A stretch of DNA of 64,000 nt from Macrostomum hystrix (lineage: Eukaryota; Animalia; Platyhelminthes), in NCBI GenBank assembly GCA_950097015.1, contig CATNEN010000005.1, positions 5,952,001 to 6,016,000 on the forward strand, read 5' to 3'. Positions 3,001 through 58,523 of this stretch are shown here, piece by piece; the stretch's first letter is position 1; each line of letters starts with the position of its first letter. A program made the position numbers and the translations under genes. Under the pieces are notes generated by a model. That model was not told where the DNA came from, made no database searches, and saw only the letters and a program-made list of their open reading frames with translations.

Positions 3001-3190
3001 GAGTGAGGAACTGAGAGGGATGAGAGTGAGGAACTGAGAGGGATTAGAGTGAGGAACTCAGAGGGATTAGAGTGAGGAACTGAGAGGGATTAGAGTGAGG
3101 AACTGAGAGGGATTAGAGTGAGGAACAGAGAGGGATGAGAGTGAGGAACCGAGAGGACATTGGAGTGAGGAACAGAGAGGATGATGTGAG
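1..3190. repeat. Minisatellite A, 23-bp unit GAGTGAGGAACTGAGAGGGATGA, purine-rich
   Basis: Direct inspection; over 130 copies; variants GAGCAAC, GGATCTG, GGATTAG; recurs at 50545-51330. Confidence 0.97.
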
Positions 3191-3709
3191 GTGGAGAAGT
3201 GGGACTTGGGAACAGGGTTAAAACTTTAGCAAATTTTCTAGATTAGCTATTTCATTTTTCTATTATTATTTATTTTATATATTATTAGCTGTTGCAATGG
3301 TAAAATTATTTAACGAGAAATACATTACTTGTGCACCCAGCAATACGGTGTCAGGCAATAATTGTACCTGACAATTATTTACTCAAAAACTGCACCAATT
3401 TAGGATCTCAATGTTATATTCTAATTTACCATTAAACTCAATAAAAGGTTGATGAGCACAGGCTGGATAGAGGAATAATGATCCAGAATAGGGAGATAGG
3501 GAGAATGCGGAATGGGAAGAGAGGAACGAAAGGAGGAAGTGTGGGAGATTCAATAGCGGGATTAAGAAGGCGATAAGCGGTACACGCATGAATGTGTTCA
3601 TATTTACAATTCTTGTAATTTCAAAACATTTTCATTAATTGCCTTTTTTAATTAACGGTACGTGCAGCAGCATTTCAAGTACACGAATAAGAAATTTATT
3701 GTTTCCAAC

Positions 3710-3778: not shown

Positions 3779-6700
3779 ATGGACACCAATGCTAGCGTCC
3801 GTGGACCGGAAGATGCCGGATCAGAGGACCGGGAACTCGAGGATGCAGAATCGCCGGTCTCTACGTGGGAAGACAGTGGATCAATGAGTCAGAGAAGTGA
3901 GGCGGACTCAACTTTCTTTCTGCTGTGCGAAGTAAGCTTCTTAGAGCCAGAGTTCTTCTGGGACATCAATAAAAATAGTCTGCGCAATGACCTTCTTCGA
4001 GCCATAGACAGCAGCGACTCTGAGGAGCTGAGCAGAATATCAGACAGAATCAGAAGAGGACTTCAAGACGATGAGGATGCAGAAGTGAAAGTGCTGCTGC
4101 TTATGTCAGCCGCCAAGCCAGACCTGGAACTGCTGCAGTTCTTGACTGAAAGACACGCCGACTCATGCCTGCAGGTGCGAAGTTCATCAGCGAACAACAT
4201 GCTGCACTTTGTGTGCGGATGCGACAACTCAGATTCAGCAACTGCAGCCTTGGAGCTGATCTACAACAAAGTGGGCAAACAGCTGGTCAAGGAGCTCAAC
4301 AACTCGAAGCAGCTGCCTGTACACATCGCAGCTGAAAACAGCAAGAATCCTGCAGTGTTTCTCTGGCTCATTTCCACCGTCGAGGACAAGAATCTGTTTT
4401 TCGTTCAAGACGATGACGGCTACAGTGCTGTTAGCACTGCATTTTTTAAACAGAACTTGGACACACTCAAACAAGTGACTGAGAAGCTTAGTCTGGCGGA
4501 GTGCCTGGCGGCCAAAACTGCCAAAAATGAAAATATTTGCAAAAGAGCCGCATTCAATACAGCCAATCCTGCAGTGTTTCTCTGGCTCATTTCCACCGTC
4601 GAGGACAAGAATCTGTTTTTCGTTCAAGACGATGACGGCTACAGTGCTGTTAGCATAGCGTTTCTATATCAGAACTTGGACACACTCAAACAAGTGACTG
4701 AGAAGCTTGGTCTGGCGGAGTGCCTGGCGGCAAAAACTGCCAAAAATCAAAATATTTGCCTTCGAGCCGCAGCGAATTCAGCCAATCCTGCAGTGTTTCT
4801 CTGGCTCATTTCCACCGTCGAGGACAAGAATCTGTTTTTCGTTCAAGACGATGACGGCTACAGTGCTGTTAGCATAGCGTTTCTATATCAGAACTTGGAC
4901 ACACTCAAACAAGTGACTGAGAAGCTTGGTCTGGCGGAGTGCCTGGCGGCAAAAACTGCCAAAAATCAAAATATTTGCCTTGCAGCCGCATTCAATACAG
5001 CCAATCCTGCAGTGTTTCTCTGGCTCATTTCCACCGTCGAGGACAAGAATCTGTTTTTCGTTCAAGACGATTACGGCGAAAGTGCTGTTAGCGTAGCATT
5101 TGTAAAGCAGAACTTGGACACACTCAAACAAGTGACTGAGAAGCTTGGTCTGGCGGATTGCCTGGCGACGAAAACTGCCAAAAATCAAAATATTTGCCTT
5201 CGAGCCGCATTCAATCCAGCCAATCCTGCAGTGTTTCTCTGGCTCATTTCCATCGTCGAGGACAAGAATCAGTTTTTCGTTCAAGACGACGACGGCTACA
5301 GTGCTGTTAGCGGAGCATTTGAGAAACAGAACTTGGACACACTCAAACAAGTGACTGAGAAGCTTGGTCTGGCGGAGTGCCTGGCGGCAAAAACTACCAA
5401 AAATCAAAATATTTGCCTTCGAGCCGCATTCAATTCAGCCAATCCTGCAGTGTTTCTCTGGCTCATTTCCACCGTCGAGGACAAGAATCTTTTTTTCGTT
5501 CAAGACGATGACGGCTACAGTGCTGTTAGCATAGCGTTTTATAAGCAGAACTTGGACACTCTCAAACAAGTGACTGAGAAGCTTGGTCTGGCGGAGTGCC
5601 TGGCGGCAAAAACTGCCAAAAATGAAAATATTTGCCTTCGAGCCGCATTCAATACAGCCAATCCTGCAGTGTTTCTCTGGCTCATTTCCACCGTCGAGGA
5701 CAAGAATCTGTTTTCCGTTCAAGACGATTTTGGCAGAGCTGCTGTTAGCCGCGCATTTGAGGAGCAGAATTTGGACACACTCAAACAAGTGACTGAGAAG
5801 CTTGGTCTGGCGGAGTGCCTGGCGGCAAAAACTGCCAAAAATGAAAATATTTGCCTTCGAGCCGCATTCAATACAGCCAATCCTGCAGTGTTTCTCTGGC
5901 TCATTTCCATCGTCGAGGACAAGAATCTGTTTTTCTGTCACGATGATGACGGCTACAGTGCTGTTAGCATAGCATTTTATAAGCAGAACTTGGACACACT
6001 GAAACAAGCGACTGAGAAGCTTGGTCTGGCGGAGTGCCTGGCGGCAAAAACTGCCAAAAATGAAAATATTTGCCTTCGAGCCGCATTCAATACAGCCAAT
6101 CCTGCAGTGTTTCTCTGGCTCATTTTTACCGTCGAGGACAAGAATCTGTTTTTCGTTCAAGACGATGACGGCTACAGTGCTGTTAGCATCGCATTTCAGA
6201 AGCAGAACTTGGACACACTGAAACAAGTGACTGAGAAGCTTGGTCTGGCGGAGTGCCTGGCGGCAAAAACTGCCAAAAATCAAAATATTTGCCTTGCAGC
6301 CGCATTCAATACAGCCAATCCTGCAGTGTTTCTCTGGCTCATTTCCACCGTCGAGGACAAGAATCAGTTTTTCGTTCAAGACGATTACGGCGAAAGTGCT
6401 GTTAGCGTAGCATTTGTAAAGCAGAACTTGGACACACTCAAACAAGTGACTGAGAAGCTTGGTCTGGCGGATTGCCTGGCGACGAAAACTGCCAAAAATC
6501 AAAATATTTGCCTTCGAGCCGCATTCAATCCAGCCAATCCTGCAGTGTTTCTCTGGCTCATTTCCATCGTCGAGGACAAGAATCTGTTTTTCGTTCAAGA
6601 CGACGACGGCTACAGTGCTGTTAGCGGAGCATTTGAGAAACAGAACTTGGACACACTCAAACAAGTGACTGAGAAGCTTGGTCTGGCGGAGTGCCTGGCG

Positions 6701-9700
6701 GCAAAAACTACCAAAAATCAAAATATTTGCCTTCGAGCCGCATTCAATTCAGCCAATCCTGCAGTGTTTCTCTGGCTCATTTCCACCGTCGAGGACAAGA
6801 ATCTGTTTTTCGTTCACAACGATGACGGCTACAGTGCTGTAACCACAGCATTTGAGAAGCAGAATTTGGACACACTCAAACAAGTGACTGAGAAGCTTGG
6901 TCTGGCGGAGTGCCTGGCGGCAGAAAATGCCAAAGGTCAATGTGGTTTGCATGCAGCGGCCTGGAACAGAGAGAATCCAGCCTTATTTCGATGGCTCATT
7001 TCCATCGTCGAGGACAAGAAACTCTTCTTTGAAAAGCATGATGATGGAGCTGCTGCTGTATCCTTTGCCTTTTATCGCCAAGGGTTGGTCACAGTGAAGC
7101 TTTTGACAGACCGTTTTGGACTCAGCGAGTGTTTGAGTTGCATTGACAATCTAAATCGGGATTTGTTTTTTTTTTCCTCACTTAACAGCGTGAACCCGGG
7201 AGTATTTAGCTGGCTTCTAGAGCAGGTCTCCCAGCAATGTCCAGACAAGAAGTCCAGAATCTTCGAGTTGGATTCCAACGGCAACACTCTCCTTCATGCA
7301 CTGTTTAGGAAGGTCGATTTGTTTGGCGATGCTGATGCGCTTGCAGTGCTGATCGGCCGCATCGACTTTCTTTTTGAAAATGAAGTTGATCCAAGAAAAG
7401 AAAACAAATTCAGACTCAACTGTCTGCTTGCCCCTGAATCCAGTGCTTACAATCTCAATCGTCTTTTGCGAGCTCTTCAAAAATCAGCGCATTTGGAAAT
7501 CTTCAGAAATCTGCAAAGAAACTCGGAGGGCCTTCATGCAGCTCATGTCTTCTGCACTCGCTACGATCTCCGAGTTATCGAGAACGATTTGAGCAAGCTG
7601 TGCGGTCTCAGTCCTGACGAGCTCCTTGCAGTCCGAGTTTCTGACGGACCGCTGAAGGACGCGACTTGTCTGCACTTTGCCTGCGAATCCGGTCACAAGT
7701 TGAACATCGAATACCTTCTAAAGAAAGGACGGAAGCTGGAAGATGAGACAGACGCCGGGCAGACGAGTGTCGACTTTGCCTGCAACAAGGCGAAGCTCGA
7801 GGATGTTTTGGACGTTGCAGAGAAGTCAGTTGGTCTCAGAAAACTGCTCAAGCTGGTTGATCCAACGAAGCGAGCTCTGAACCTTCCGGACGTTCAGAGC
7901 GCCCGAGGTCACCTGACTCGTTTCAACGACTCATCGCTGAAGGCCAGCATTGAGGATGATAAATCCAGACGACAGACGAGAGGCAAGGAAGCCGGTGGGA
8001 TGAAAAACGAGAGTCTGCAGGCCGGACACGGAGCTGACAGCATTTCAAAGTCCGAGGATTCGCCAGAAGTGAAAATGCTGTTCAGAGCATTCGAGCTCGA
8101 CTCAAGTGAGATGCTCCGCAGCTTGATCAGTTTGGGCTTCGCCATCGATGAGATCGATGACCAGTTCTCCAGGCATGTCTCAAAACAGATTGGCAATGGG
8201 CGGGAAAGCAGTAAGTCTCCTACAATAGCCAAGCTTCAAAAGTACTTCTCCTCAGAAGGAAGAGATTCTGAAGCTCTCATGCTGATGGAGTACGCAGTGC
8301 TGCTCGAGAAGCCGAAGCTGCTCAATGACCTGATGCTTTTGCCACAGTTTGACATCATCCCACAGACTTTGAGGCTGCTCGTTTATCTCAAGCCCAGAGT
8401 GAAGTCGAGCAATGTTGAGAATCTGAAAAAAGTGCAAGCTCTAGCCTTGAACATTGTCGTCAATGTTCTGGAGCACCTCTACGTGAATGCCGATGAAAAA
8501 CAGCGGAATCTTGTTTTCGACTACCTGAGTGGCTCATTTATGGTGTCAGACGGGCATTCTCAGGTTCGAGTTCCGAGGTTCCCGCCACCATTGGATTATC
8601 TTACCAGAAAAATTTCAAACGATAAAACTGATCACGAAAAAGTGAGCAAAGATGCGAAGACACCAAAAAAGCCATCAGAAAAGAAGTCTGCAGCTGCAGT
8701 GATGTCAGTGATGGATCTGGTGCAGACCCTGGACTGTGACGATGTGTTTGCCACTGACTGCATCAGCCAGTTGGTGGATCGGCAGTGGAACGAGGCTCCA
8801 CCGCTGCCCTGGAGCAGTCCTGCACGCTGCTGCTCATGCAACATACCGCAAAAGGTGACAATTAAACAGCGGTTTATCATCCACTCTGTCTTTTTCCTGG
8901 TCTTTCTGCTCTACTTTGCTTGGTACGTGACGGATTTCAGTCGGACAAAGCAGTTTCCGATTCTAGACGTCGTCCTGTTGGCCTACGCGCTGTCCTTCAC
9001 TCTGCAGGAAGTCAACGACTTGCTGAACAAGCTGTCTATGAAGGACATACGAATTTTCAGAAGGCACATGAGATGTCCTCGCTACTTCACCGACTTCTTC
9101 AACTACTTTGACATGCTCGGCCTGCTGCTGATGTGGGCGGGGCTGGTCCTGAAGCTGCTTGGCCGGCTGAGCGACCCCAGCCTCATGCGCAGCTCTCAGG
9201 TCGTCCTCAGCGTCTCGTTCCTGTTCCTGGGATTCCGCTCCGTGGCCCTGCTCAGCTACTTCAAGGTCACTGGGCCGAACATCAATATGCTGAAGAGCTT
9301 GCTGTTCAAAGACCTGCTGCCATTCTTGATCATCATGCTGGTTCTGATCTTCTCATTTGGCATTTTCTTCTTCAACCTGCTGTTCCCGGCCTTCTCAGAC
9401 CTGACAGACGTCCTGGCTCTCGTGAAGATTTTCACAACGCCCTTGTCGCTGGCCTTAAGCATCTTTGAGCTCTCGCTGTTCGAGTCGTGCAACTCCAGCA
9501 GTCTCGCGACCGGACAGACCTGTGCGGACAGTGGAGGCAACCAGGTGTACAGCCTATTCCTGATGTTCGTGTACGTCTTGCTGGTGAACATTGTGATGTT
9601 CAATCTGCTGATCGCACTGTTCAACCGCACCGTGACAGCGATGGCCAGCAGGGCGGAGGTTCTGTGGCGCAAGAATCTGTTCGAGCTGCTGGAGGAGTTC

Positions 9701-9835
9701 GCAGAGGTCAGTCCGGTTCCGCCGCCGCTGTCGTTCCCGCTCTACGCCTGGAAACTGCTGCGGAGGTGCCGCCCTTCGCACTGCCGACCCTGCGCTGGCA
9801 AAGTCGGTCCTTTTGACGGCTCTGAGATAAGCAAG
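3779..9835 (+). CDS. Ankyrin-repeat TRP-family cation channel, paralog 1, large coding exon (2019 codons; spliced protein ~2201 aa)
   Basis: Uninterrupted ORF; ankyrin motifs (NNMLHFVC, QLPVHIAA, GNTLLHAL, ATCLHFACESGH); 13 x 73-aa units; pre-S1 FATDCISQLVDRQW; six hydrophobic segments; YFTDFFNYFD, GPNINML, NLLIALFNRTV, TRP-domain-like W...EEF...PVPPPL; ends at phase-0 donor AAG/GTAAGA. Confidence 0.92.
4307..7153 (+). repeat. Intragenic array of 13 x 219-bp units (two ankyrin-like repeats per 73-aa unit), gene 1
   Basis: NPA motif codons at 4346 and 6974 are exactly 12 x 219 bp apart; last unit is a diverged cap (GQCGLHAAAWN). Confidence 0.95.
8870..9740 (+). other. S1-S6 transmembrane/pore module and TRP domain of gene 1 (homologous regions ~34429-35299 and ~56847-57717)
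   Basis: Six hydrophobic helices; pore loop with Cys pair flanking an N-glycosylation sequon (CNSSSLATGQTC); S6-TRP helix register matches TRPM-type channels by eye. Confidence 0.85.
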
Positions 9836-10481
9836 GTAAGAGGCCTGGTGGACTGAGGGACTGACTCTGTTACTCACAGATGATAAATGGTCTGAATATA
9901 TATAGCCCTTAGATTCAGTCAGACAATGACCGAATCCAATTTTCGATTGAAAGAACTGATTGTGTGTACATGAATGCAAATGGCTTTGTAGCAAAGACAT
10001 GCTCAGATTATAGTAAGCTGGGGCTGGTCATGAAACTCTTGAGGACTGATTAACAGTAGAAGCAAGGTGAGAGGCCTGGTGAGCACAGGTGAACTGAGGG
10101 GCTGACTATGTTTACTCATATAGGCACTAGATTCAGTCAGACGATGACCGAATCCAATTCAGAGCAATGTTGGTTGTCCTTGTCACCAGGGTCTTCGACG
10201 AGAATCGTTGAATATCTTATCGATGCCGATGTTATGACTCTGGAAGTTGTTTCATCGGATAGAGCGGAAAATGTAGCCCGTCATCTGGATTTTTACAGTG
10301 GTTGGTTGGATATTTTTAAGATAGAGAAAAAAATAAAACATGTGGGTATTTGAATTACTCCCCTTGTGGTCTTTGTACTGTTAAGGATTAGTCAAGCCTC
10401 CAACCCGTTTGCCTGAGTTCTTAAGCCACTTAAACCAAACCGCTAGTTTCAAGGCGCTCTTCCTCACGGCTTCCGTTCCAG
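9836..10481 (+). other. Intron of gene 1 (646 nt, GT-AG, phase 0)
   Basis: GTAAGA donor and TTCCGTTCCAG acceptor; splicing joins exon 1 in frame to an open exon; same sites in all three paralogs. Confidence 0.85.
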
Positions 10482-11030
10482 CCGTGGTGGACGAACCGGA
10501 GCGACTTCAGCGGCTACCCCGAAGACTTCAAGCGCTTCCTGATCTTCCAGGCTGAGCAGCTGCGGCAGCAGCGGCCGCGGCTCCAGCGGGCGGTCGAGCG
10601 GCACAAGGGGGACGTCGATGTGATGAAGGCGCACGTGGAGAACCAGGTCAAGGACCTGCGGGAGGAACTGCTCACGGCTCAGAGAGAGGACACTGAGAAA
10701 ATCGAGACCGATGTGAAGGGCGTCAAAGAAAGTGTTGGAAAGCTGAACGCGGATGTTGGAAAGATGAACGCAGATGTTGGAAAGCTGAACGCGGATGTTG
10801 GAAAGCTGAACGCGGATGTTGGAAAGCTGAACGCGGATGTTGGAAAGCTGAACGCGGATGTTGGAAAGCTGAACGAGGGCGTCAACGAACTCAAAGAGCT
10901 GCAGCTCCGCCAACGAAGACGAGCAAAGCGTCTAGACGATAAGATGACAGAAAATTCCGAGAACCTGCAGCAGCAAATGTCGCAGGTGATGAGCATTCTG
11001 CAGCAACTGCAGCAGCAGCGTCAGCAGTGA
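10482..11030 (+). CDS. Terminal coding exon of gene 1 (182 aa; PWWTNRSDFSGYPEDFKRF... plus coiled coil)
   Basis: Open in phase 0 from the acceptor to TGA; contains ORF-track 10620..11030; GC-rich codon style like exon 1; heptad repeats. Confidence 0.85.
   Translation, partial: PWWTNRSDFSGYPEDFKRFLIFQAEQLRQQRPRLQRAVERHKGDVDVMKAHVENQVKDLREELLTAQREDTEKIETDVKGVKESVGKLNADVGKMNADVGKLNADVGKLNADVGKLNADVGKLNADVGKLNEGVNELKELQLRQRRRAKRLDDKMTENSENLQQQMSQVMSILQQLQQQRQQ
10737..10883 (+). repeat. 21-bp coding repeat, 7 heptads GK(L/M)N(AD/EG)V of the C-terminal coiled coil
   Basis: GTTGGAAAGCTGAACGCGGAT-type tandem repeats; V and L at a/d positions. Confidence 0.9.
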
Positions 11031-25717: not shown

Positions 25718-25734
25718 CGTAGAGAGGATTTGGG

Positions 25735-27726: not shown

Positions 27727-30700
27727 ATGAATTTTTTATTTCTTTGCGACCTCGATTTGTGGCTCGCCGACGCGACCAGTCTGCGCAATGACCTTCTTCG
27801 AGCCATAGACAGCAGCGACTCTGAGGAGCTGAGCAGAATATCAGACAGAATCAGAAAAGGACTTCAAGATCATGAGGATGCAAAAGTGAAAGCGCTGCTG
27901 CTTCTGTCAGCCGCCAAGCCAGACCTGGAACTGCTGCAGTTCTTGACTGAAAGACATGCCGATTCATGCCTGCAGGTGCGAAGTTCATCAGCGAACAACA
28001 TGCTGCACTTTGTGTGCGGATGCATCAACTCAGATTCAGCAACTGCAGCCTTGGAGCTGATCTACAACAAAGTGGGCAAACAGCTGGTCAAGGAGGTCAA
28101 CAACTCGAAGCAGCTGCCTGTACACATCGCAGCTATAAACAGCAAGAATCCTGCAGTGTTTCTCTGGCTCATTTCCTTCGTCGAAGACAAGAATCTGTTT
28201 TTCGTTCAAGACGACGACGGCTACAGTGCTGTTAGCATCGCATTTTTTTATCGGAACTTGGACACACTCAAACAAGTGACTGAGAAGCTTGGTCTGGCGG
28301 AGTGCCTGGCGGCAAAAACTGCCAAAAATCAAAATATTTGCCTTCGAGCCGCATTCAATACAGCCAATCCTGCAGTGTTTCTCTGGCTCATTTCCACCGT
28401 CGAGGACAAGAATCTGTTTTTCGTTCAAGACGATGACGGCTACAGTGCTGTTAGCACAGCGTTTCTACATCAGAACTTGGACACACTCAAACAAGCGACT
28501 GAGAAGCTTGGTCTGGCGGAGTGCCTGGCGGCAAAAACTGCCAAAAATCAAAATATTTGCCTTCGAGCCGCAGCGAATTCAGCCAATCCTGCAGTGTTTC
28601 TCTGGCTCATTTCCACCGTCGAGGACAAGAATCTGTTTTTCGTTCAAGACGATGACGGCGAAAGTGCTGTTGGCAGAGCATTTTATGAGCACAATTTGGA
28701 CACGCTCAAACAAGTGACTGAGAAGCTTGGTCTGGCGGAGTGCCTGGCGGCAAAAACTGCCAAAAATCAAAATATTTGCAAAAGAGCCGCATTCAATACA
28801 GCCAATCCTGCAGTGTTTCTCTGGCTCATTTCCACCGTCGAGGACAAGAATCTGTTTTTCGTTCAAGACGATGACGGCTACAGTGCTGTTAGCACAGCGT
28901 TTCTACATCAGAACTTGGACACACTCAAACAAGTGACTGAGAAGCTTGGTCTGGCGGAGTGCCTGGCGGCAAAAACTGCCAAAAATCAAAATATTTGCTT
29001 TCGAGCCGCATTCAATACAGCCAATCCTGCAGTGTTTCTCTGGCTCATTTCTATCGTCGAGGACAAGAATCTGTTTTTCGTTCAAGACGATGACGGCTAC
29101 AGTGCTGTTAGCACAGCGTTTCTACATCAGAACTTGGACACTCTCAAACAAGTGACTGAGAAGCTTGGTCTGGCGGAGTGCCTGGCGGCAAAAACTGCCA
29201 AAAATGAAAATATTTGCCTTCTTGCCGCATTCAATACAGCCAATCCTGCAGTGTTTCTCTGGCTCATTTCCATCGTCGAGGACAAGAATCAGTTTTTCGT
29301 TCAAGACGACGACGGCTACAGTGCTGTTAGCATCGCATTTTTTAATCGGAACTTGGACACACTCAAACAAGTGACTGAGAAGCTTGGTCTGGCGGAGTGC
29401 CTGGCGGCAAAAACTGCCAAAAATCAAAATATTTGCAAAAGAGCCGCATTCAATACAGCCAATCCTGCAGTGTTTCTCTGGCTCATTTCCATCGTCGAGG
29501 ACAAGAAACTGTTTTTCGTTCAAGACGATGACGGCGAAAGTGCTGTATACACCGCCTTTGATCAGCTGAACTTGGACACTCTCAAACAAGTGACTGAGAA
29601 GCTTGGTCTGGCGGAGTGCCTGGCGGCAAAAACTGCCAAAAATCAAAATATTTGCAAAAGAGCCGCATTCAATACAGCCAATCCTGCAGTGTTTCTCTGG
29701 CTCATTTCCACCGTCGAGGACAAGAAACTGTTTTTCGTTCAAGACGACGACGGCTACAGTGCTGTTAGCATCGCATTTTTTAATCGGAACTTGGACACAC
29801 TCAAACAAGTGACTGAGAAGCTTGGTCTGGCGGAGTGCCTGGCGGCAAAAACTGCCAAAAATCAAAATATTTGCTTTGTAGCCGCATTCAATACAGCCAA
29901 TCCTGCAGTGTTTCTCTGGCTCATTTCCACCGTCGAGGACAAGAATCTGTTTTTCGTTCAAGACGATGACGGCTACAGTGCTCTTAGCGCAGCATTCGAG
30001 AAGCAGAACTTGGACACTCTCAAACAAGTGACTGAGAAGCTTGGTCTGGCGGAGTGCCTGGCGGCAAAAACTGCCAAAAATGAAAATATTTGCCTTCGAG
30101 CCGCATTCAATACAGCCAATCCTGCAGTGTTTCTCTGGCTCATTTCCACCGTCGAGGACAAGAATCTGTTTTTCGTTCAAGACGATGACGGCTACAGTGC
30201 TGTTAGCACTGCATTTGAGAAGCAGAATTTGTACACTCTCAAACAAGTGACTGAGAAGCTTGGTCTGGCGGAGTGCCTGGCGGCAAAAACTGCCAAAAAT
30301 GAAAATATTTGTAAAAGAGCGGCATTCAATACAGCCAATCCTGCAGTGTTTCTCTGGCTCATTTCCACCGTCGAGGACAAGAATCTGTTTTTCGTTCACA
30401 ACGATGACGGCTACAGTGCTGTAACCACAGCATTTGAGAAGCAGAATTTGGACACACTCAAACAAGTGACTGAGAAGCTTGGTCTGGCGGAGTGCCTGGC
30501 GGCAAAAACTGCCAAAAATCAAAATATTTGCCTTCTTGCCGCATTCAATACAGCCAATCCTGCAGTGTTTCTCTGGCTCATTTCCACCGTCGCGGACAAG
30601 AATCTGTTTTTCGTTCAAGACGATGACGGCTACAGTGCTCTTAGCGCAGCATTCGAGAAGCAGAACTTGGACACTCTCAAACAAGTGACTGAGAAGCTTG

Positions 30701-33700
30701 GTCTGGCGGAGTGCCTGGCGGCAAAAACTGCCAAAAATGAAAATATTTGCCTTCTTGCCGCATTCAATACAGCCAATCCTGCAGTGTTTCTCTGGCTCAT
30801 TTCCACCGTCGCGGACAAGAATCTGTTTTTCGTTCAAGACGATGACGGCTACAGTGCTCTTAGCGCAGCATTCGAGAAGCAGAACTTGGACACTCTCAAA
30901 CAAGTGACTGAGAAGCTTGGTCTGGCGGAGTGCCTGGCGGCAAAAACTGCCAAAAATCAAAATATTTGCCTTCGAGCCGCATTCAATACAGCCAATCCTG
31001 CAGTGTTTCTCTGGCTCATTTCCACCGTCGAGGACAAGAATCTGTTTTTCGTTCAAGACGATGACGGCTACAGTGCTCTTAGCGCAGCATTCGAGAAGCA
31101 GAACTTGGACACTCTCAAACAAGTGACTGAGAAGCTTGGTCTGGCGGAGTGCCTGGCGGCAAAAACTGCCAAAAATCAAAATATTTGCCTTCGAGCCGCA
31201 TTCAATACAGCCAATCCTGCAGTGTTTCTCTGGCTCATTTCCACCGTCGAGGACAAGAATCTGTTTTTCGTTCAAGACGATGACGGCTACAGTGCTGTTA
31301 GCACTGCATTTGAGAAGCAGAATTTGTACACTCTCAAACAAGTGACTGAGAAGCTTGGTCTGGCGGAGTGCCTGGCGGCAAAAACTGCCAAAAATGAAAA
31401 TATTTGTAAAAGAGCGGCATTCAATACAGCCAATCCTGCAGTGTTTCTCTGGCTCATTTCCACCGTCGAGGACAAGAATCTGTTTTTCGTTCACAACGAT
31501 GACGGCTACAGTGCTGTTAGCATAGCATTTGAGAAGCAGAATTTGGACACACTCAAACAAGTGACTGAGAAGCTTGGTCTGGCGGAGTGCCTGGCGGCAA
31601 AAACTGCCAAAAATCAAAATATTTGCCTTCTTGCCGCATTCAATACAGCCAATCCTGCAGTGTTTCTCTGGCTCATTTCCACCGTCGCGGACAAGAATCT
31701 GTTTTTCGTTCAAGACGATGACGGCTACAGTGCTCTTAGCGCAGCATTCGAGAAGCAGAACTTGGACACTCTCAAACAAGTGACTGAGAAGCTTGGTCTG
31801 GCGGAGTGCCTGGCGGCAAAAACTGCCAAAAATCAAAATATTTGCAAAAGAGCCGCATTCAATACAGCCAATCCTGCAGTGTTTCTCTGGCTCATTTCCA
31901 TCGTCGAGGACAAGAATCAGTTTTTCGTTCAAGACGACGACGGCTACAGTGCTGTTAGCATAGCATTTTTTAAACAGAACTTGGACACACTCAAGCAAGT
32001 GACTGAGAAGCTTGGTCTGGCGGAGTGCCTGGCGGCAAAAACTGCCAAAAATGAAAATATTTGCATTCGAGCCGCATTCAATACAGCCAATCCTGCAGTG
32101 TTTCTCTGGCTCATTTCCATCGTCGAGGACAAGAATCAGTTTTTCGTTCAAGACGATGACGGCTTCAGTGCTGTTAGCCTCGCGTTTGAGAAGCAGAATT
32201 TGGACACTCTCAAACAAGTGACTGAGAAGCTTGGTCTGGCGGAGTGCCTGGCGGCAAAAACTGCCAAAAATCAAAATATTTGCCTTCGAGCCGCATTCAA
32301 TACAGCCAATCCTGCAGTGTTTCTCTGGCTCATTTCCACCGTCGAGGACAAGAATCAGTTTTTCGTTCAAGACGACGACGGCTACAGTGCTGTTAGCATA
32401 GCATTTTTTAATCAGAACTTGGACACACTCAAGCAAGTGACTGAGAAGCTTGGTCTGGCGGAGTGCCTGGCGGCAAAAACTGCCGAAGGTCAATGTGGTT
32501 TGCATGCAGCGGCCTGGAACAGAGAGAATCCAGCCTTATTTCGATGGCTCATTTCCATCGTCGAGGACAAGAAACTCTTCTTTGAAAAGGCACCAGGTAA
32601 TTTAGGAAGTAATGCCGTCAATAATGCCTTTTATCGCCAAGGGTTGGTCACAGTGAAGCTTTTGACAGACCGTTTTGGACTCAGCGAGTGTTTGAGTTGC
32701 ATTGACAATCTAAATCGGGATTTGTTTTTTTATTCCATTCTGAACAGCGCGAACCCGGCAGTATTTCCCTGGCTTCTCGAGCAGGTCTCCCAGCAATGTC
32801 CAGACAAGAAGTCCAGAATTTACGAGTTGGATTCCAACGGCAACACTCTGCTTCATGCACTGTTTAGGAAGGTCGATTTGTTCGGCGATGTTGATGCGCT
32901 TGCAGTGCTGATTGGCCGCATAAACTTTATTTTTGAAAATGAAGTTGATCCAAGAAAAGAAAACAAATTTAGACTCAACTGTCTGCTTGCCGCTGAATCC
33001 AGTGCTGACAATCTCAATCGTCTTTTGCGAGCTCTTCAAAGATCAGCGCATTTGGAAATCTTCAGAAATCTGCAAAGAAACTCGGAGGGCCTTCACGCAG
33101 CTCATGTCTTCTGCACTCGCTACGAGCTCCGAGTTATCGAGAACGATTTGAGCAAGCTGTGCGGTCTCAGTCCTGACGAGATCCTTGCAGTCCGAGTTTC
33201 TGACGGACCGCTGAAGGATGCAACTTGTCTGCACTTTGCCTGCGAATCCGGTCACAAGTTGAACATGGAATACCTTCTAAAGAAAGGAAGGAAGCTGGAA
33301 GATGAGACAGACGCCGGGCAGACGAGTGTCGACTTTGCCTGCAACAAGGCGAAGCTCGAGGATGTTTTGGATGTTGCAGAGAAGTCAGTTGGTCTCGGAA
33401 AACTGCTCAAGCTGGTTGATCCAACGAAGCGAGCTCTGAACCTTCCGGACGTTCAGAGCGCCCGAGGTCACCTGACTCGATTCAACGACTCATCGCTGAA
33501 GGCCAGCATTGAGGATGATAAATCCAGACGACAGACGAGAGGCAAGGAAGCCGGTGGGATGAAAAACGAGAGTCTGCAGGCCGGACACGGAGCTGACAGT
33601 ATTTCAAAGTCCGAGGATTCGCCAGAAGTGAAAATGCTGTTCAGAGCATTCGAGCTCGACTCAAGTGAGATGCTCCGCAGCTTGATCAGTTTGGGCTTCG

Positions 33701-35394
33701 CCATCGATGAGATCGATGACCAGTTCTCCAGGCATGTCTCAAAGCAAATTGGCAATGGGCGGGAAAGCAGTAAGTCTCCTACAATAGCCAAGCTTCAAAA
33801 GTACTTCTCCTCAGAAGGAAGAGATTCTGAAGCTCTCATGCTGATGGAGTATGCAGTGCTGCTCGAGAAGCCGAAGCTGCTCAATGACCTGATGCTTCTG
33901 CCACAGTTTGACATCATCCCACAGACTTTGAGGCTGCTCGTTTATCTCAAGCCCAGAGTGAAGTCGAGCAATGTTGAGAATCTGAAAAAAGTGCAAGCTC
34001 TAGCCTTGAACATTGTCGTCAATGTTCTGGAGCACCTCTACGTGAATGCTGATGAAGAAGAGCGGAATCTTGTTTTCGACTACCTGAGTGGCTCATTTAT
34101 GGTGTCAGACGGGCATCCTCAGGTTCGAGGTCCGAGGTTCCCGCCACCATTGGATTATCTTACCAGACCAATTTCAAACGATAAAACTGATCACGAAAAA
34201 GTGAGCAAAGATGCGAAGACACCAAAAAAGCCATCAGAAAAGAAGTCTGCAGCTGCAGTGATGTCAGTGATGGATCTGGTGCAGACCCTGGACTGTGACG
34301 ATGTGTTTGCCACTGACTGTATCAGCCAGTTGGTGGATCGGCAGTGGAACGAGGCTCCACCGTTGCCCTGGAGCAGTCCTGCACGCTGCTGCTCATGCAA
34401 CATACCGCAAAAGGTGACAATTAAACAGCGGTTCTTCATCCACTCTGCTTTTTTCCTGGTCTTTCTTCTCTACTTTGCCTGGTACGTGACGGATTTCAGT
34501 CGGACAAAGCAGTTTCCGATTCTAGACGTCGTCCTGTTGGCCTACGCGCTGTCCTTCACTCTGCAGGAAGTCAACGACTTGCTGAACAAGCTGTCTATGA
34601 AGGACATACGAATTTTCGGAAGTCACAGGAGATGTCCTCGCTACTTCACCGACTTCTTCAACTACTTTGACATGCTCGGCCTGCTGCTGATGTGGGCGGG
34701 GCTGGTCCTGAAGCTGCTTGGTCGGCTGAGCGACCCCAGCCTCATGCGCAGCTCTCAGGTCGTCCTCAGCGTCTCGTTCCTGTTCCTGGGATTCCGCTCC
34801 GTGGCCCTGCTCAGCTACTTCAAGGTCACTGGGCCGAACATTAGTATGCTGAAGAGCTTGCTGTTCAAAGACCTGCTGCCATTCTTGATCATCATGCTGG
34901 TTCTGATCTTCTCATTTGGCATTTTCTTCTTCAACCTGCTGTTCCCGGCCTTCTCAGACCTGACAGACGTCCTGGCTCTCGTGAAGATTTTCACAACGCC
35001 CCTGGCGCTGGCCTTAAGCATCTTTGAGCTCTCGCTGTTCGAGTCGTGCAACTCCAGCAGTCTCGCGACCGGACAGACCTGTGCGGACAGTGGAGGCAAC
35101 CAGGTGTACAGCCTATTCCTGATGTTCGTGTACGTCTTGCTGGTAAACATTGTGATGTTCAACCTGCTGATCGCACTGTTCAACCGCACCGTGACAGCGA
35201 TGGCCAGCAGGGCGGAGGTTCTGTGGCGCAAGAATCGGTTCGAGCTGCTGGAGGAGTTCGCAGAGGTCAGTCCGGTTCCGCCGCCGCTGTCGTTCCCGCT
35301 CTACGCCTGGAAACTGCTGCGGAGGTGCCGCCCTTCGCACTGCCGACCCTGCGCTGGCAAAGTCGGTCCTTCTGACGGCTCTGAGAGAAGCAAG
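27727..35394 (+). CDS. Ankyrin-repeat TRP-family cation channel, paralog 2, large coding exon (2556 codons; spliced protein ~2720 aa)
   Basis: Uninterrupted ORF; near-identical to paralog 1 from SLRND onward; 21 x 73-aa units; short divergent N-terminus (start codon less certain); phase-0 donor at 35395. Confidence 0.9.
28108..32712 (+). repeat. Intragenic array of 21 x 219-bp double-ankyrin units, gene 2
   Basis: NPA codons at 28147 and 32527 are 20 x 219 bp apart; cap unit has a 2-aa insertion (APGNLGSNAVNN). Confidence 0.95.
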
Positions 35395-35799
35395 GTAAGA
35401 GGCCTGGTGGACTGAGGGACTGACTCTGTTACTCACAGATGATAAATGGTCTGAATATATAGCCCTTAGATTCAGTCAGACAATGACCGAATCCAATTTT
35501 CAATTGCAAGAACTGATTGTGTGTACATGAATGTAAATGGCTTTATAGCAAAGACATGCTCAGATTATAGTAAGCTGGGGCTGGTCATGAAACTCTTGAG
35601 GACTGATTAACAGTAGAAGCAAGGTGAGAGGCCTGGTGAGCGCAGGTGAACTGAGGGGCTGACTATGTTTACTCATATAGGCACTAGATTGAGTCAGACG
35701 ATGACCGAATCCAATTTGAATGGAAATAACTGGTTGTGTGCACATGATTGCAAATAAGCTCATGTTTCAAGGCGCTCTTCCTCACGGCTTCCGTTCCAG
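35395..35799 (+). other. Intron of gene 2 (405 nt, GT-AG, phase 0)
   Basis: Same donor and acceptor as gene 1; in-frame join. Confidence 0.85.
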
Positions 35800-36294
35800 C
35801 CGTGGTGGACGAACCGGAGCGACTTCAGCGGCTACCCCGAAGACTTCAAGCGCTTCCTGATCTTCCAGGCCGAGCAGCTCCGGCAGCAGCGGCCACGGCT
35901 GCAGCGGGCGGTCGAGCGGCACAAGGGGGACGTCGATGTGCTGAAGGCGCACGTGGAGAACCAGGTCAAGGACCTGCGGGATAATATTCAGGATGTGCTC
36001 ACGGCTCAGAGAGAGGACACTGAGAAAATCGAGACCGATGTGAAGGGCGTCAGAGAAAGTGTTGGAAAGCTGAACGCGGATGTTGGAAAGCTGAACGCGG
36101 ATGTTGGAAAGCTGAACGCGGATGTTGGAAAGCTGAACGAGGACGTCAACGAACTCAAAGAGCTGCAGCTCCGCCAACGAAGACGAGTAAAGCGAGTGAA
36201 CGATGAGATGAAAGAAAACTTCGAGAACCTGCAGCAGCAAATGTCGCAGGTGATGAGCATTCTGCAGCAACTGCAGCAGCAGCTTCAGCAGTGA
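35800..36294 (+). CDS. Terminal coding exon of gene 2 (164 aa, coiled coil with 4 GKLNxDV heptads at 36064-36147)
   Basis: Open in phase 0 to TGA; homologous to 10482-11030. Confidence 0.85.
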   Translation, partial: PWWTNRSDFSGYPEDFKRFLIFQAEQLRQQRPRLQRAVERHKGDVDVLKAHVENQVKDLRDNIQDVLTAQREDTEKIETDVKGVRESVGKLNADVGKLNADVGKLNADVGKLNEDVNELKELQLRQRRRVKRVNDEMKENFENLQQQMSQVMSILQQLQQQLQQ

Positions 36295-51950: not shown

Positions 51951-54900
51951 ATGGACACCAATGCTAGCGTCCGTGGACCGGGAGATGCCAGATCAGAGGA
52001 CCGGGAACTCGAGGATGCAGAATCGCCGGTCTCTACGTGGGAAGACAGTGGATCAATGAGTCAGAGAAGTGAGTCGGACTCAACTTTCTCTCTGAGCTAT
52101 GAAAACTTCGTAATGAACCAAGAGCCGGAGTTGCTAGTTTTCTTCTGGGACATCAAGCATGGAGGTGTTGAAAATAGTCTGCGCAATGACCTTCTTCGAG
52201 CCATAGACAAAAGCGACTCTGAGGAGCTGAGCAGAATATCAGACAGAATCAGAAAAGGACTTCAAGACGATGAGGATGCAGAAGTGAAAGCGCTGCTGCT
52301 TCTGTCAGCCGCCGAGCAAGAGCTGGAACTGCTGCAGTTCTTGACTGAAAGACATGCCGACTCATGCCTGCAGGCGCGAAGTTCATCAGCAAACAACATG
52401 CTGCACTTCGTGTGCGGATGCAACAACTCAGATTCAGCAACTGCAGCCTTGGAGCTGATCTATAACAAAGTGGGCAAACAGCTGGTCAAGGAGGTCAACA
52501 ACTCGAAGCAGCTGCCTGTACACATCGCCGCATTCAATACAGCCAATCCTGCAGTGTTTCTCTGGCTCATTTCCACCGTCGAGGACAAGAAACTGTTTTT
52601 CGTTCAAGACGATGACGGCTACAGTGCTGTTAGCATCGCCTTTGATCAGCTGAACTTGGACACACTCAAACAAGTGACTGAGAAGCTTGGTCTGGCGGAG
52701 TGCCTGGCGGCAAAAACTGCCAAAAATGAAAATATTTGCCTTCGAGCCGCAGCGAATTCAGCCAATCCTGCAGTGTTTCTCTGGCTCATTTCCACCGTCG
52801 AGGACAAGAATCTGTTTTTCGTTCAAGACGATGACGGCTACAGTGCTGTTAGCACCGCCTTTGATGAGCTGAACTTGGACACACTCAAACAAGTGACTGA
52901 GAAGCTTGGTCTGGCGGAGTGCCTGGCGGCGAAAACTGCCAAAAATCAAAATATTTGCCTTCTAGCCGCATTCAATACAGGCAATCCTGCAGTGTTTCTC
53001 TGGCTCATTTCCACTGTCGAGGACAAGAATCTGTTTTTCGTTCAAGACGATGACGGCTACAGTGCTGTTAGCACAGCGTTTCTACATCAGAACTTGGACA
53101 CACTCAAGCAAGTGACTGAGAAGCTTGGTCTGGCGGAGTGCCTGGCGGCAAAAACTGCCAAAAATGAAAATATTTGCCTTCGAGCCGCAGCGAATTCAGC
53201 CAATCCTGCAGTGTTTCTCTGGCTCATTTCCACCGTCGAGGACAAGAATCTGTTTTTCGTTCAAGACGATGACGGCTACAGTGCTCTTAGCGCAGCATTC
53301 GAGAAGCAGAACTTGGACACTCTCAAACAAGTGACTGAGAAGCTTGGTCTGGCGGAGTGCCTGGCGGCAAAAACTGCCAAAAATCAAAATATTTGCCTTC
53401 GAGCCGCATTCAATACAGCCAATCCTGCAGTGTTTCTCTGGCTCATTTCCACCGTCGAGGACAAGAATCTGTTTTTCGTTCAAGACGATGACGGCTACAG
53501 TGCTGTTAGCACAGCGTTTCTACATCAGAACTTGGACACACTCAAGCAAGTGACTGAGAAGCTTGGTCTGGCGGAGTGCCTGGCGGCAAAAACTGCCAAA
53601 AATGAAAATATTTGCCTTCGAGCCGCAGCGAATTCAGCCAATCCTGCAGTGTTTCTCTGGCTCATTTCCACCGTCGAGGACAAGAATCTGTTTTTCGTTC
53701 AAGACGATGACGGCTACAGTGCTCTTAGCGCAGCATTCGAGAAGCAGAACTTGGACACTCTCAAACAAGTGACTGAGAAGCTTGGTCTGGCGGAGTGCCT
53801 GGCGGCAAAAACTGCCAAAAATCAAAATATTTGCCTTCGAGCCGCATTCAATACAGCCAATCCTGCAGTGTTTCTCTGGCTCATTTCCACCGTCGAGGAC
53901 AAGAATCTGTTTTTCGTTCAAGACGATGACGGCTACAGTGCTCTTAGCGCAGCATTCGAGAAGCAGAACTTGGACACTCTCAAACAAGTGACTGAGAAGC
54001 TTGGTCTGGCGGAGTGCCTGGCGGCAAAAACTGCCAAAAATCAAAATATTTGCCTTCGAGCCGCATTCAATACAGCCAATCCTGCAGTGTTTCTCTGGCT
54101 CATTTCCACCGTCGAGGACAAGAATCTGTTTTTCGTTCAAGACGATGACGGCTACAGTGCTGTTAGCACTGCATTTGAGAAGCAGAATTTGTACACTCTC
54201 AAACAAGTGACTGAGAAGCTTGGTCTGGCGGAGTGCCTGGCGGCAAAAACTGCCAAAAATCAAAATATTTGTAAAAGAGCGGCATTCAATACAGCCAATC
54301 CTGCAGTGTTTCTCTGGCTCATTTTTACCGTCGAGGACAAGAATCAGTTTTTCGTTCAAGACGATGACGGCGAAAGTGCTGTTAGCACCGCATTTGAGAA
54401 GCTGAACTTGGACACACTCAAACAAGTGACTGCGAAGCTTGGTCTAGCAGAGTGCCTGGCGGCAAAAACTGCCAAAAATGAAAATATTTGTAAAAGAGCC
54501 GCATTCAATACAGCCAATCCTGCAGTGTTTCTCTGGCTCATTTTTACCGTCGAGGACAAGAATCAGTTTTTCGTTCAAGACGATGACGGCGACAGTGCTG
54601 TTTGCATAGCATTTTATAGGCAGAATTTGTACACACTCAAACAAGTGACTGAGAAGCTTGGTCTGGCGGAGTGCCTGGCAGCAAAAATTGCCAAAAATCA
54701 AAATATTTGTCTTGTAGCCGCATTCAATACAGACAATCCTGCAGTGTTTCTCTGGCTCATTTCCACCGTCGAGGACAAGAAACTGTTTTTCGTTCATGAC
54801 GATTATGGCCAAACTGCTGTTAGCCACGCATTTGAGAAGCAGAATTTGGACACTCTCAAACAAGTGACTGAGAAGCTTGGTCTGGCGGAGTGCCTGGCGG

Positions 54901-57812: not shown

Positions 57813-58217
57813 GTAAGAGGCCTGGTGGACTGAGGGACTGACTCTGTTACTCACAGATGATAAATGGTCTGAATATATAGCCCTTAGATTCAGTCAGACA
57901 ATGACCGAATCCAATTTTCAATTGCAAGAACTGATTGTGTGTACATGAATGTAAATGGCTTTATAGCAAAGACATGCTCAGATTATAGTAAGCTGGGGCT
58001 GGTCATGAAACTCTTGAGGACTGATTAACAGTAGAAGCAAGGTGAGAGGCCTGGTGAGCGCAGGTGAACTGAGGGGCTGACTATGTTTACTCATATAGGC
58101 ACTAGATTCAGTCAGACGATGACCGAATCCAATTTAAATGGAAATAACTGGTTGTGTGCACATGATTGCAAATAAGCTCATGTTTCAAGGCGCTCTTCCT
58201 CACGGCTTCCGTTCCAG
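57813..58217 (+). other. Intron of gene 3 (405 nt, GT-AG, phase 0)
   Basis: Near-identical to gene 2 intron. Confidence 0.85.
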
Positions 58218-58523
58218 CCGTGGTGGACGAACCGGAGCGACTTCAGCGGCTACCCCGAAGACTTCAAGCGCTTCCTGATCTTCCAGGCCGAGCAGCTCCG
58301 GCAGCAGCGGCCACGGCTGCAGCGGGCGGTCGAGCGGCACAAGGGGGACGTCGATGTGCTGAAGGCGCACGTGGAGAACCAGGTCAAGGACCTGCGGGAG
58401 GAACTGCGGGATAATATTCAGGATGTGCTCACGGCTCAGAGAGAGGACACTGAGAACCTGCAGCAGCAAATGTCGCAGGTGATGAGCATTCTGCAGCAAC
58501 TGCAGCAGCAGCTTCAGCAGTGA
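58218..58523 (+). CDS. Terminal coding exon of gene 3 (101 aa; heptad block deleted in frame)
   Basis: Open in phase 0 to TGA at 58521-58523; 67-codon deletion relative to gene 2 at GAGAA microhomology. Confidence 0.82.
   Translation, partial: PWWTNRSDFSGYPEDFKRFLIFQAEQLRQQRPRLQRAVERHKGDVDVLKAHVENQVKDLREELRDNIQDVLTAQREDTENLQQQMSQVMSILQQLQQQLQQ

What the first reader, a model, noticed from the sequence alone, without database searches (positions are those of the whole stretch)
7800..9835. Unusual architecture: TRPM-like channel core carrying 24-42 array ankyrin repeats
TRPM-like features seen by eye: FATDCISQLVDRQW (pre-S1), LMEYAVLLEKPKLL (resembles the MHR3/4 ALxxDRxxFVxLL motif), gap-free register of NLLIALFNRTV-10aa-W-10aa-F-PVPPPL, a two-Cys pore loop around an N-glycan sequon as in TRPM8, and a C-terminal coiled coil. 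Established: canonical TRPM channels lack ankyrin repeats, which belong to TRPA, TRPN, TRPC and TRPV. Inference: a lineage-specific domain swap in which the MHR1/2 region was replaced by an ankyrin array, or an undescribed TRP subfamily.
Basis: partly seen in the sequence, partly recalled or inferred. Interest (0 to 1): 0.75.

Follow-up and report, generated by a model that had tools for sequence, protein, structure and literature searches.

The report
Flatworm TRPM-like channel, giant ankyrin array
This is a real flatworm ion-channel gene that joins about 35 ankyrin repeats to a TRPM-type channel body; the odd layout is genuine but already published for flatworms (the TRPM_MCLZ group), so this is an extreme, tandemly amplified free-living relative and not a new kind of channel.

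Summary
The window (a Macrostomum-like flatworm, not human) carries a two-exon gene (3779-9835, 10482-11030). It encodes about 2,200 aa in this order:
- 14 tandem 73-aa units, each two degenerate ankyrin repeats, plus about 7 more ankyrin repeats;
- a helical linker related to TRPM MHR4/pre-S1;
- a six-helix core closest to TRPM;
- a TRP helix and a coiled-coil tail.

No SLOG/MHR1-2 domain is present. Two more copies lie in the window (22 and 13 units). At least 10 near-identical copies sit in two tandem arrays, and the genome holds dozens of diverged paralogs.

Ankyrin repeats replacing SLOG on a TRPM-like body is not undescribed. It is published as TRPM_MCLZ, the schistosome meclonazepam target, called "TRPM-like" and found in all parasitic flatworms (PMC10788528, PMC11731825, PMC12861061). 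In my trees this gene groups with parasite proteins that carry the published TRPM_MCLZ pocket signature. The clade's position relative to canonical TRPMs is unresolved.

What is new is the degree: a Macrostomum-specific subfamily with arrays 4-5 times longer, and variable repeat numbers in both the ankyrin array and the coiled coil.

The scan found this kind before elsewhere in this genome, including the same tandem array 43 kb downstream.

The parts
3779..9835 (+). Exon 1 of the channel gene (aa 1-2019), phase-0 donor AAG|GTAAGA at 9835/9836
   Evidence: ORF; donor context; M. lignano orthologs continue past this point
4319..7354 (+). Array of 14 tandem 73-aa units (219-bp repeat), each two degenerate ankyrin repeats
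   Evidence: TRF finds 219 bp x 12.2 at 4346-7020; unit HMM gives 14 units, aa 181-1192; ANK by transitive homology and by predicted fold
7355..7813 (+). Further diverged ankyrin repeats, including the only ones Pfam recognises (aa 1293-1339)
   Evidence: Pfam Ank_2/Ank_4/Ank; helix-pair pattern in model ma6a3d871cc0f
7814..8848 (+). Helical linker: MHR4-like domain (LMEYAVLLEKPKLL, QFDIIP) and pre-S1 motif FATDCISQLVDRQW
   Evidence: No Pfam hit; hhalign to type-B linker E 1.6e-4; type B to TRPM E 8.6e-16; VIA aligns model residues 7-636 with TRPM residues about 420-1100
8852..9628 (+). S1-S6 transmembrane core with pore loop (two Cys around an NSS sequon); E1744, N1775 and D1778 align with positions that are (near-)invariant in TRPMs
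   Evidence: Pfam Ion_trans; PDB TRPM hits; model pLDDT 84; residues
9629..9748 (+). TRP helix (W1963 RKNLFELLEE) and PVPPPL motif
   Evidence: Gap-free alignment to TRPM2/TRPM3; W589 and P609 nearly invariant in A1/A2
9836..10481 (+). Inferred intron (GT...TTCCAG)
   Evidence: no RNA data available here
10482..11030 (+). Exon 2: PWWTNRSDFSGYPEDF..., then a coiled-coil tail with LNADVGK heptads from a 21-bp tandem repeat (10733-10875), stop at 11028-11030
   Evidence: same tail in M. lignano P0001-P0005; only sub-threshold generic coiled-coil Pfam hits and no TRPM_tetra
27727..36294 (+). Second tandem copy (exon 1 27727-35394 with 22 units; exon 2 35800-36294)
51951..58523 (+). Third tandem copy (exon 1 51951-57812 with 13 units; exon 2 58218-58523, heptad block absent)

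Best explanation
The finding is one copy of a tandemly amplified flatworm gene. It encodes a subunit of an ankyrin-bearing, TRPM-like cation channel, the group published as TRPM_MCLZ or 'TRPM-like'.

Shown here:
- The domain order is a long ankyrin solenoid (about 35 repeats, mostly 73-aa double-repeat units), an MHR4-like helical linker and pre-S1, a TRPM-type S1-S6 core, a TRP helix and a coiled coil.
- There is no SLOG/MHR1-2 domain.
- The gene belongs to a Macrostomum-specific, fast-evolving subfamily ('type A'). This groups with shorter 'type B' Macrostomum paralogs and with parasite proteins that carry the TRPM_MCLZ pocket signature.

Inferred:
- It assembles as a tetramer through the TM core and the C-terminal coiled coil and conducts cations.
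- Ca2+ may bind at the S2/S3 site, because the E, N and D positions align with (near-)invariant TRPM residues.
- The ankyrin solenoid replaces nucleotide sensing by SLOG with a protein- or cytoskeleton-binding arm, or an elastic arm.
- Unequal crossing-over changes the number of 219-bp units, of coiled-coil heptads and of whole gene copies.
For: - Closest proteins are all Macrostomum lignano, at most 67% identity. The genome is 220 Mb.
- TRPM-type core: PDB phmmer gives only TRPM among channel hits, E 2.8e-15. A profile search of 1.84 billion proteins ranks flatworm ANK-type proteins first. After them, most ranked proteins with a recognisable N-terminus carry SLOG or PF25508, and none has a TRPN- or TRPA-like layout. 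In TRPC-rooted trees the gene lies with TRPMs (100) inside an ANK clade (93 and 91).
- Fold: the linker+TM model (pLDDT 84) matches TRPM in all top 50 Foldseek hits. VIA gives Z 19.9-17.3 with about 478 residues aligned from TRPM residue about 420.
- Ankyrin array.
- Linker homology chain.
- Published equivalent: PMC10788528, PMC11731825 and PMC12861061. The parasite clade shows S1 H-x3-H, S2 Y..E and S4 R-x2-Y/H/F, with F in the cestode and Y in a plagiorchiid, as those papers report.
- Constraint: dN/dS 0.22 against the 72%-identical paralog L011. All copies examined keep open frames.
Against: - No Sm.TRPM_MCLZ sequence was available here. Equating my parasite clade with TRPM_MCLZ rests on source names ('TRPM7'-like), taxa and the pocket signature.
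- This gene keeps only part of that signature (the first S1 His and the S4 Arg), so it is a paralogous subfamily and not an ortholog.
- Its linker is not detectably MHR-like by direct sequence tests: no Pfam hit, and hhalign to TRPM gives E 0.11.
- TRPC and NOMPC linkers score nearly as well structurally (Z 16.8 and 16.1).
- dN/dS among the near-identical tandem copies is about 0.7 at dS 0.01-0.04, so individual copies may be weakly constrained.
- No expression or functional data were accessible. The splice is inferred.
Confidence: 0.85

Rival explanations
1. An ancient, independent TRP subfamily, sister to all SLOG-bearing TRPMs. It kept the ancestral ankyrin repeats, and its N-terminus was never replaced.
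For: In the 100-row TRPC-rooted tree the ANK clade (93) falls outside the sampled SLOG-TRPM clade (83). The literature infers that ankyrin repeats were lost before the TRPM-TRPS split.
Against: Every member identified to taxon is a flatworm, whereas SLOG-TRPMs already exist in choanoflagellates. An ancient origin therefore needs many losses. In the 56-row tree the clade becomes sister to canonical flatworm TRPMs (86). The AU test does not reject that grouping (p 0.64), and the constrained tree has the higher likelihood. Long branches favour a falsely basal placement. TRPS and alpha-TRPM were not sampled.
Confidence: 0.1
2. A member of TRPN (NompC) or TRPA whose core merely resembles TRPM.
For: The array has about 29 or more ankyrin repeats, as in NompC. 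The ESM-Atlas feature search on the type-B relative P0026 lists TRPN, NompC, pyrexia and TRPA1 clusters first. The NOMPC structure aligns at Z 16.1, and the ANK model's best hit is NOMPC.
Against: The Atlas hits reflect ANK plus Ion_trans composition and carry no alignment. NOMPC and TRPA1 are absent from the best 60 PDB sequence hits (E > 1.5e-8), even though the query also contained ankyrin repeats. TRPM aligns over more residues with higher Z, and TRPA1 reaches only Z 11-12. Type-B relatives carry the TRPM-specific PF25508 domain. No TRPN or TRPA sequence was in my trees.
Confidence: 0.03
3. This particular copy is a recently amplified and effectively unconstrained (pseudogenising) member of a satellite-rich tandem array, not a working channel gene.
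For: dN/dS is about 0.7 among array copies. Spacers are almost entirely minisatellites. Unit and heptad numbers differ between neighbouring copies. Open frames of array copies range from 1242 to 3199 aa.
Against: No copy examined has a stop in the 418-aa core. The 6-kb frames are intact. There are too few substitutions for dN/dS to be informative. Long-term dN/dS is 0.22. Orthologous gene models with the same two-exon tail exist in M. lignano.
Confidence: 0.1

Closest known systems
TRPM_MCLZ (Smp_333650) and its orthologs, the flatworm 'TRPM-like' group (Park et al. JBC 2023/24, PMC10788528; Sprague et al. 2024, PMC11731825; Rohr et al. 2026, PMC12861061)
   Same: N-terminal ankyrin repeats in place of SLOG/MHR1-2, a TRPM-like S1-S6 core and TRP helix, and restriction to flatworms. 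It groups in one clade with parasite proteins bearing the TRPM_MCLZ pocket signature.
   Different: About 35-50 ankyrin repeats built from 73-aa tandem units, against roughly 7-8 Pfam-visible repeats in the parasite proteins. The linker is much more diverged. Most meclonazepam-pocket residues are not kept. The gene is amplified in tandem arrays and belongs to a large Macrostomum-only expansion. It comes from a free-living host, whereas the papers cover parasites only.
Canonical TRPM channels (TRPM2-like, e.g. nvTRPM2 6co7, TRPM4, TRPM3)
   Same: Best sequence and structure match for S1 through the TRP helix and PPPL motif. A pore-loop Cys pair is present. The S2 E and S3 N/D positions align with (near-)invariant TRPM residues. 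The linker is MHR4-like and there is a C-terminal coiled coil.
   Different: No SLOG/MHR1-2 and no NUDT9H domain. The TRP box reads WRKNL where TRPMs have WKFQR. The TRPM_tetra Pfam domain is not detected.
NOMPC / TRPN1 (5vkq)
   Same: A very long ankyrin solenoid N-terminal to a linker-helix domain and a 6-TM TRP core. NOMPC is the best structural hit of the ANK model.
   Different: The core is not TRPN-like by sequence. The array is built from recent 73-aa duplications and varies in length between copies.
TRPC channels
   Same: The general plan of ANK, then a linker helical domain, pre-S1 motif, TM core, TRP helix and coiled coil. VIA gives Z 16.8.
   Different: TRPC is a clearly separate outgroup in the trees (100). 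There is no TRP_2 domain.

Membership tests
TRPM (canonical) | N-terminal SLOG / MHR1-2 domain (PF18139) | tested here: not met
   No LSDAT hit in this protein or in any of 14 paralogs scanned; ANK is found in its place
TRPM (canonical) | MHR3/4-type linker (PF25508 TRPM2-like domain) before pre-S1 | tested here: inconclusive
   No Pfam hit, and hhalign to TRPM gives E 0.11 for this gene. However, type A matches type B at E 1.6e-4, type B matches TRPM at E 8.6e-16, and the modelled linker aligns with TRPM residues about 420-780. TRPC and NOMPC linkers score nearly as well.
TRPM (canonical) | TM core and TRP helix closest to TRPM by sequence and phylogeny | tested here: met
   TRPN, TRPA, TRPV and TRPS were not in the trees.
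TRPM (canonical) | C-terminal tetramerising coiled coil (PF16519) | tested here: inconclusive
   A heptad-rich tail is present in exon 2, with only sub-threshold generic coiled-coil hits and no TRPM_tetra
Flatworm TRPM_MCLZ / 'TRPM-like' group | Ankyrin repeats N-terminal, no SLOG, TRPM-like core | tested here: met
   The definition is taken from PMC11731825 and PMC12861061.
Flatworm TRPM_MCLZ / 'TRPM-like' group | Clusters with parasite TRPM_MCLZ orthologs, next to the TRPMs | tested here: met
   The clade of type A, type B and parasite proteins has SH-aLRT 93 (100 rows) and 91 (56 rows). The parasite clade is identified by names, taxa and pocket signature only.
TRPM_MCLZ orthologs (strict) | Conserved VSLD pocket: S1 H827/H831, S2 Y864/E868, S4 R943 plus H/Y/F946, TRP Y1117 | tested here: not met
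   This gene keeps the first S1 His, the S2 Glu and the S4 Arg. The other positions are F, F, A and L/F. It is therefore a paralogous subfamily.
TRPN (NompC) | TRPN-type TM core behind about 29 ankyrin repeats | tested here: not met
   The repeat number fits. But 5vkq is not among the best 60 PDB sequence hits, and its structural Z and aligned length are lower than for TRPM.
TRPA | TRPA-type core and linker | tested here: not met
   VIA Z is 11-12 with 292-385 residues aligned, against 17-20 with about 478 for TRPM. TRPA is absent from the PDB sequence hits shown.

The most novel reading that the evidence does not exclude
The Macrostomum 'type A' channels could be a convergent counterpart of NompC: a TRPM-derived pore gated through a very long ankyrin solenoid that acts as a tether or spring. 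Spring length (26 to 44+ array repeats) and coiled-coil length would then be tuned rapidly by unequal crossing-over among tandem gene copies, giving a family of mechanosensors with graded properties.
Probability: 0.12. Interest if true: 0.75.

Novelty: new variant of a known kind. Interest (0 to 1): 0.38.

Why it matters
The ankyrin-for-SLOG layout is already in the literature as a drug target in schistosomes (TRPM_MCLZ). The finding is therefore not a new channel class.

Its value lies elsewhere:
- It shows that the group also exists, hugely expanded, in a free-living basal flatworm. That dates the architecture to early rhabditophoran flatworms.
- It offers natural length variants of the ankyrin arm (about 8 to 50 repeats) on one pore type.
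- It gives intermediate sequences (type B) that tie the parasite channels' linker to TRPM MHR4.

These could help structural and pharmacological work on TRPM_MCLZ and studies of how ankyrin arrays couple to TRP gating.

Tried and rejected
- Pfam and PDB phmmer on the 73-aa units alone gave no ankyrin hit, only spurious DUFs. Transitive homology and fold prediction settled the question.
- hhalign of the type-A linker directly against canonical TRPMs was not significant (E 0.11).
- Word-index searches with this protein and with P0026 found almost only Macrostomum, so the full profile search was used.
- Own-genome TRPC genes were tried as an outgroup, but their TM region is split over several exons. 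Full-length TRPCs from public databases were used in their place.
- The spliced model of this gene (exon 1 + exon 2) was likewise never joined. The exons were searched separately by reference.
- The AU test under the mixture model on 100 rows did not finish in three runs. It was rerun on 56 rows with LG+G4. The careful search did not finish either, so the quick tree is reported.
- The ESM Atlas gave only architecture-level look-alikes (TRPN/TRPA) without alignments.
- One large alignment call failed internally.
- No supplementary tables of PMC12861061 were held.
- The long minus-strand ORFs at 17737-19434 and 42612-44513 lie inside 22-bp satellites and have no Pfam hit. I rejected them as genes.
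Full report
**What is there.** The window is G000:C5:5952001-6016000 of a 220-Mb genome. Its closest proteins are all from Macrostomum lignano, at no more than 67% identity. It is therefore another Macrostomum-like flatworm and not human DNA.

The finding lies in one open frame, 3779..9856 +, of 2025 aa. The frame ends 21 bases after a consensus donor (AAG|GTAAGA at 9835/9836). A phase-0 acceptor (TTCCAG|CCA) at 10481/10482 opens a second exon that runs to the stop at 11030. M. lignano orthologs P0001-P0005 carry the same continuation (PWW..DFSGYP..FLI.Q...coiled coil...QQQRQQ).

**Ankyrin array.** TRF finds a 219-bp repeat x 12.2 at 4346-7020. An HMM of the 73-aa unit finds 14 units (aa 181-1192) in this gene. 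It finds 22 and 13 units in the two other copies in the window (27727.., 51951..).

Pfam and PDB sequence searches do not recognise the units as ankyrin. Pfam sees ANK only at aa 1293-1339. Three results show that each unit is two degenerate ankyrin repeats:
- The unit HMM hits paralogs L011 and L012 and the M. lignano orthologs exactly where Pfam calls Ank_2, Ank_4 and Ank.
- In alignment A3 the unit's DDDGYSAVS and NQNICLRAA line up with DxxGNTxLHxAA of paralogs.
- An AlphaFold model of aa 920-1380 (pLDDT 90.4) is a regular helix-pair solenoid. Its best PDB matches, over nearly its full length, are the NOMPC, ankyrin-1/B and Drosophila TRPA1 arrays.

With the flanking repeats the gene has about 35 ankyrin repeats, and the 2562-aa copy about 50.

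**Channel core.** phmmer of aa 1208-2025 against PDB returns TRPM chains only among the channel hits in its best 60: nvTRPM2 at 2.8e-15, then TRPM3, 2, 4, 1, 5, 8 and 7. The alignments run from S1 to the PPPL motif almost without gaps. NOMPC, TRPA1, TRPC and TRPV are not in that list, although the query also held ankyrin repeats.

A profile of linker plus core from 17 paralogs (A1) was searched against 1.84 billion representatives and gave 5,388 hits:
- About the first 60 are flatworm proteins with ankyrin N-termini, or fragments of them.
- The rest of the top 150 are TRPM2-like channels of hemichordates, tunicates, a brachiopod, molluscs and flatworms.
- Those of the rest that have a recognisable N-terminus carry SLOG and/or PF25508, and none has a TRPN- or TRPA-like layout.

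The AlphaFold model of aa 1375-2025 (pLDDT 84, pTM 0.80) gives TRPM for all top 50 Foldseek hits, with 620-700 aligned columns. In the Foldseek-independent VIA search:
- TRPM chains lead: choanoflagellate TRPM2 Z 19.9, TRPM4 18.9, TRPM5 17.7, TRPM7 17.4 and nvTRPM2 17.3, with about 478 residues aligned from TRPM residue about 420.
- TRPC (16.8), TRPV1 (16.7) and NOMPC (16.1) follow closely, with fewer aligned residues.
- TRPA1 reaches only 11-12.

E1744 (S2) and N1775/D1778 (S3) align with positions that are invariant or nearly so in TRPMs, and the pore loop has two Cys flanking an NSS sequon. Reading the S2/S3 residues as a Ca2+ site comes from my own knowledge of TRPM structures and is an inference.

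**Linker.** This gene's linker has no Pfam hit, and hhalign against canonical TRPMs is not significant (E 0.11).

The genome also holds shorter 'type B' paralogs (about 1,115-1,190 aa: L022, L023, L025-L027; M. lignano P0026, P0029-32). These read ANK, then PF25508 'TRPM2-like domain' (26.4-33.4 bits against a cut-off of 27; four of the five loci pass it), then Ion_trans. P0026 aligns to nvTRPM2 from residue 578 to 1124 at E 8e-33.

hhalign links the type-B linker to the TRPM MHR4/pre-S1 region at E 8.6e-16 (probability 98.6) and the type-A linker to the type-B linker at E 1.6e-4 over the same segment. Together with the structural alignment, this supports an MHR4-like linker in this gene. The direct sequence test failed, and TRPC and NOMPC linkers are structurally similar, so I score this feature as inconclusive for this gene.

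**Family and phylogeny.** The genome has at least 72 matching loci:
- About 10 near-identical copies sit in two tandem arrays (C5 5.96-6.07 Mb; C1 37-160 kb).
- There are many diverged paralogs, read here as single long ORFs, and all those scanned have ankyrin N-termini.

Outside Macrostomum, ANK-type relatives occur in Dicrocoelium, Opisthorchis, Fasciolopsis (labelled 'TRPM7') and Schistocephalus (labelled 'TRPM7'). Pfam sees ankyrin repeats in them only over roughly aa 80-345, about 7-8 repeats.

Trees were rooted with TRPCs taken:
- The 100-row tree (LG+C20 PMSF, quick search) gives TRPC (100) against an ingroup. In the ingroup, type A (100), type B (88) and the parasite clade (91) form one clade (93), outside the sampled SLOG-TRPMs (83).
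- In a 56-row tree the same ANK clade (91) is sister to the canonical flatworm TRPM cluster (86).
- The AU test does not reject that grouping (p 0.64), and the constrained tree has the higher likelihood.

The clade is therefore solid, but its position relative to canonical TRPMs is not. TRPS, alpha-TRPM, TRPN, TRPA and TRPV were not in the trees.

**Comparison with what is known.** My first literature searches suggested that the layout was undescribed: Himmel et al. 2020 state that TRPM and TRPS lack ankyrin repeats. Notes from earlier follow-ups in this scan then pointed to TRPM_MCLZ, and I checked the papers:
- PMC10788528 describes Sm.TRPM_MCLZ (Smp_333650), the meclonazepam target. It has a long N-terminal domain with multiple ankyrin-like repeats before a TRPM-type core, and was earlier called TRPM7-like.
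- PMC11731825 states that it lacks MHR1/2-SLOG and has ankyrin-like modules in that position.
- PMC12861061 calls the group 'TRPM-like', places it next to the TRPMs and finds it in all parasitic flatworms (63 orthologs).

My parasite clade shows the published pocket signature: S1 H-x3-H, S2 Y..E and S4 R-x2-Y/H/F, with F in the cestode and Y in a plagiorchiid. I take it to be the TRPM_MCLZ orthologs, although no schistosome sequence was in hand. The window's gene keeps only part of that signature, so it is a paralogous, Macrostomum-specific subfamily and not an ortholog.

**Constraint and dynamics.**
- Against the 72%-identical paralog L011, dN/dS is 0.22 for both linker and core (dS about 1.15, near saturation).
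- Among the near-identical array copies, dS is 0.01-0.04 and dN/dS about 0.7, which is uninformative or reflects weak constraint.
- Neighbouring copies differ in unit number (14, 22, 13) and in the coiled-coil tail (182, 164 and 101 aa, through LNADVGK heptads from a 21-bp repeat).
- The 24-kb spacers are almost wholly minisatellites.

**Mechanism.** The following is inference. The protein would form a tetrameric cation channel with a TRPM-type voltage-sensor-like domain and pore, possibly dependent on Ca2+. The SLOG nucleotide-sensing module is replaced by a long ankyrin arm that could bind partners or the cytoskeleton. Whether it acts as a spring, as in NompC, is untested.

**Verdict.** This is an extreme, amplified, free-living variant of a known flatworm channel group.

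Noticed in passing
window 3-3191, 25490-27123, 50543-51327: A G-rich 23-24-bp satellite (AACTGAGAGGGATGAGAGTGAGG and relatives, up to 139 copies) lies directly upstream of each gene copy. The rest of each 24-kb unit is a fixed series of 19-32-bp minisatellites.
   Followed up: partly
window 17737-19434 (-) and 42612-44513 (-): Long minus-strand ORFs (565 and 633 aa) lie entirely within 22-bp satellites and have no Pfam hit. They are almost certainly artefacts of the repeat and not genes.
   Followed up: yes
window 4346-7020: The ankyrin array has a higher-order period. Units 4-5 (variants DDYGESAVSVAFVKQ... / ...SGAFEKQ...TTKNQ) recur as units 10-11, which suggests a six-unit (1.3-kb) block duplication inside the array.
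   Followed up: no
window 10733-10875; 35800-36294; 58218-58523: A coding 21-bp tandem repeat gives LNADVGK heptads in the coiled-coil tail. There are about 7, about 4 and 0 copies in the three neighbouring genes, so tail length varies in the manner of a VNTR.
   Followed up: partly
P0105; P0136, P0149, P0168 (public proteins): Other TRPM-core proteins lack SLOG. P0105 has a Mind-bomb SH3 repeat before PF25508 and Ion_trans. P0136 and P0168 were scanned and have roughly 900-1,050-aa N-termini with no Pfam domain; P0149 clusters with them but was not scanned. N-terminal replacement on TRPM cores may be recurrent.
   Followed up: partly
P0085 (M. lignano), P0086 (Clonorchis): Canonical flatworm SLOG-TRPMs show a weak ankyrin-like match (E about 3e-4) N-terminal to the SLOG domain. 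This could be chance, a gene-model fusion or an intermediate layout.
   Followed up: no
G000: C34:7174168, C39:13358928, C37:2528364, C9:553498, C30:2196540, C3:455036, C3:2288897, C7:7993914: There are eight TRPC loci (TRP_2 domain). In the four fetched, the TM region is split over several exons or gave no TM hit, unlike the ankyrin-TRPM-like family, whose loci read as single long ORFs.
   Followed up: partly
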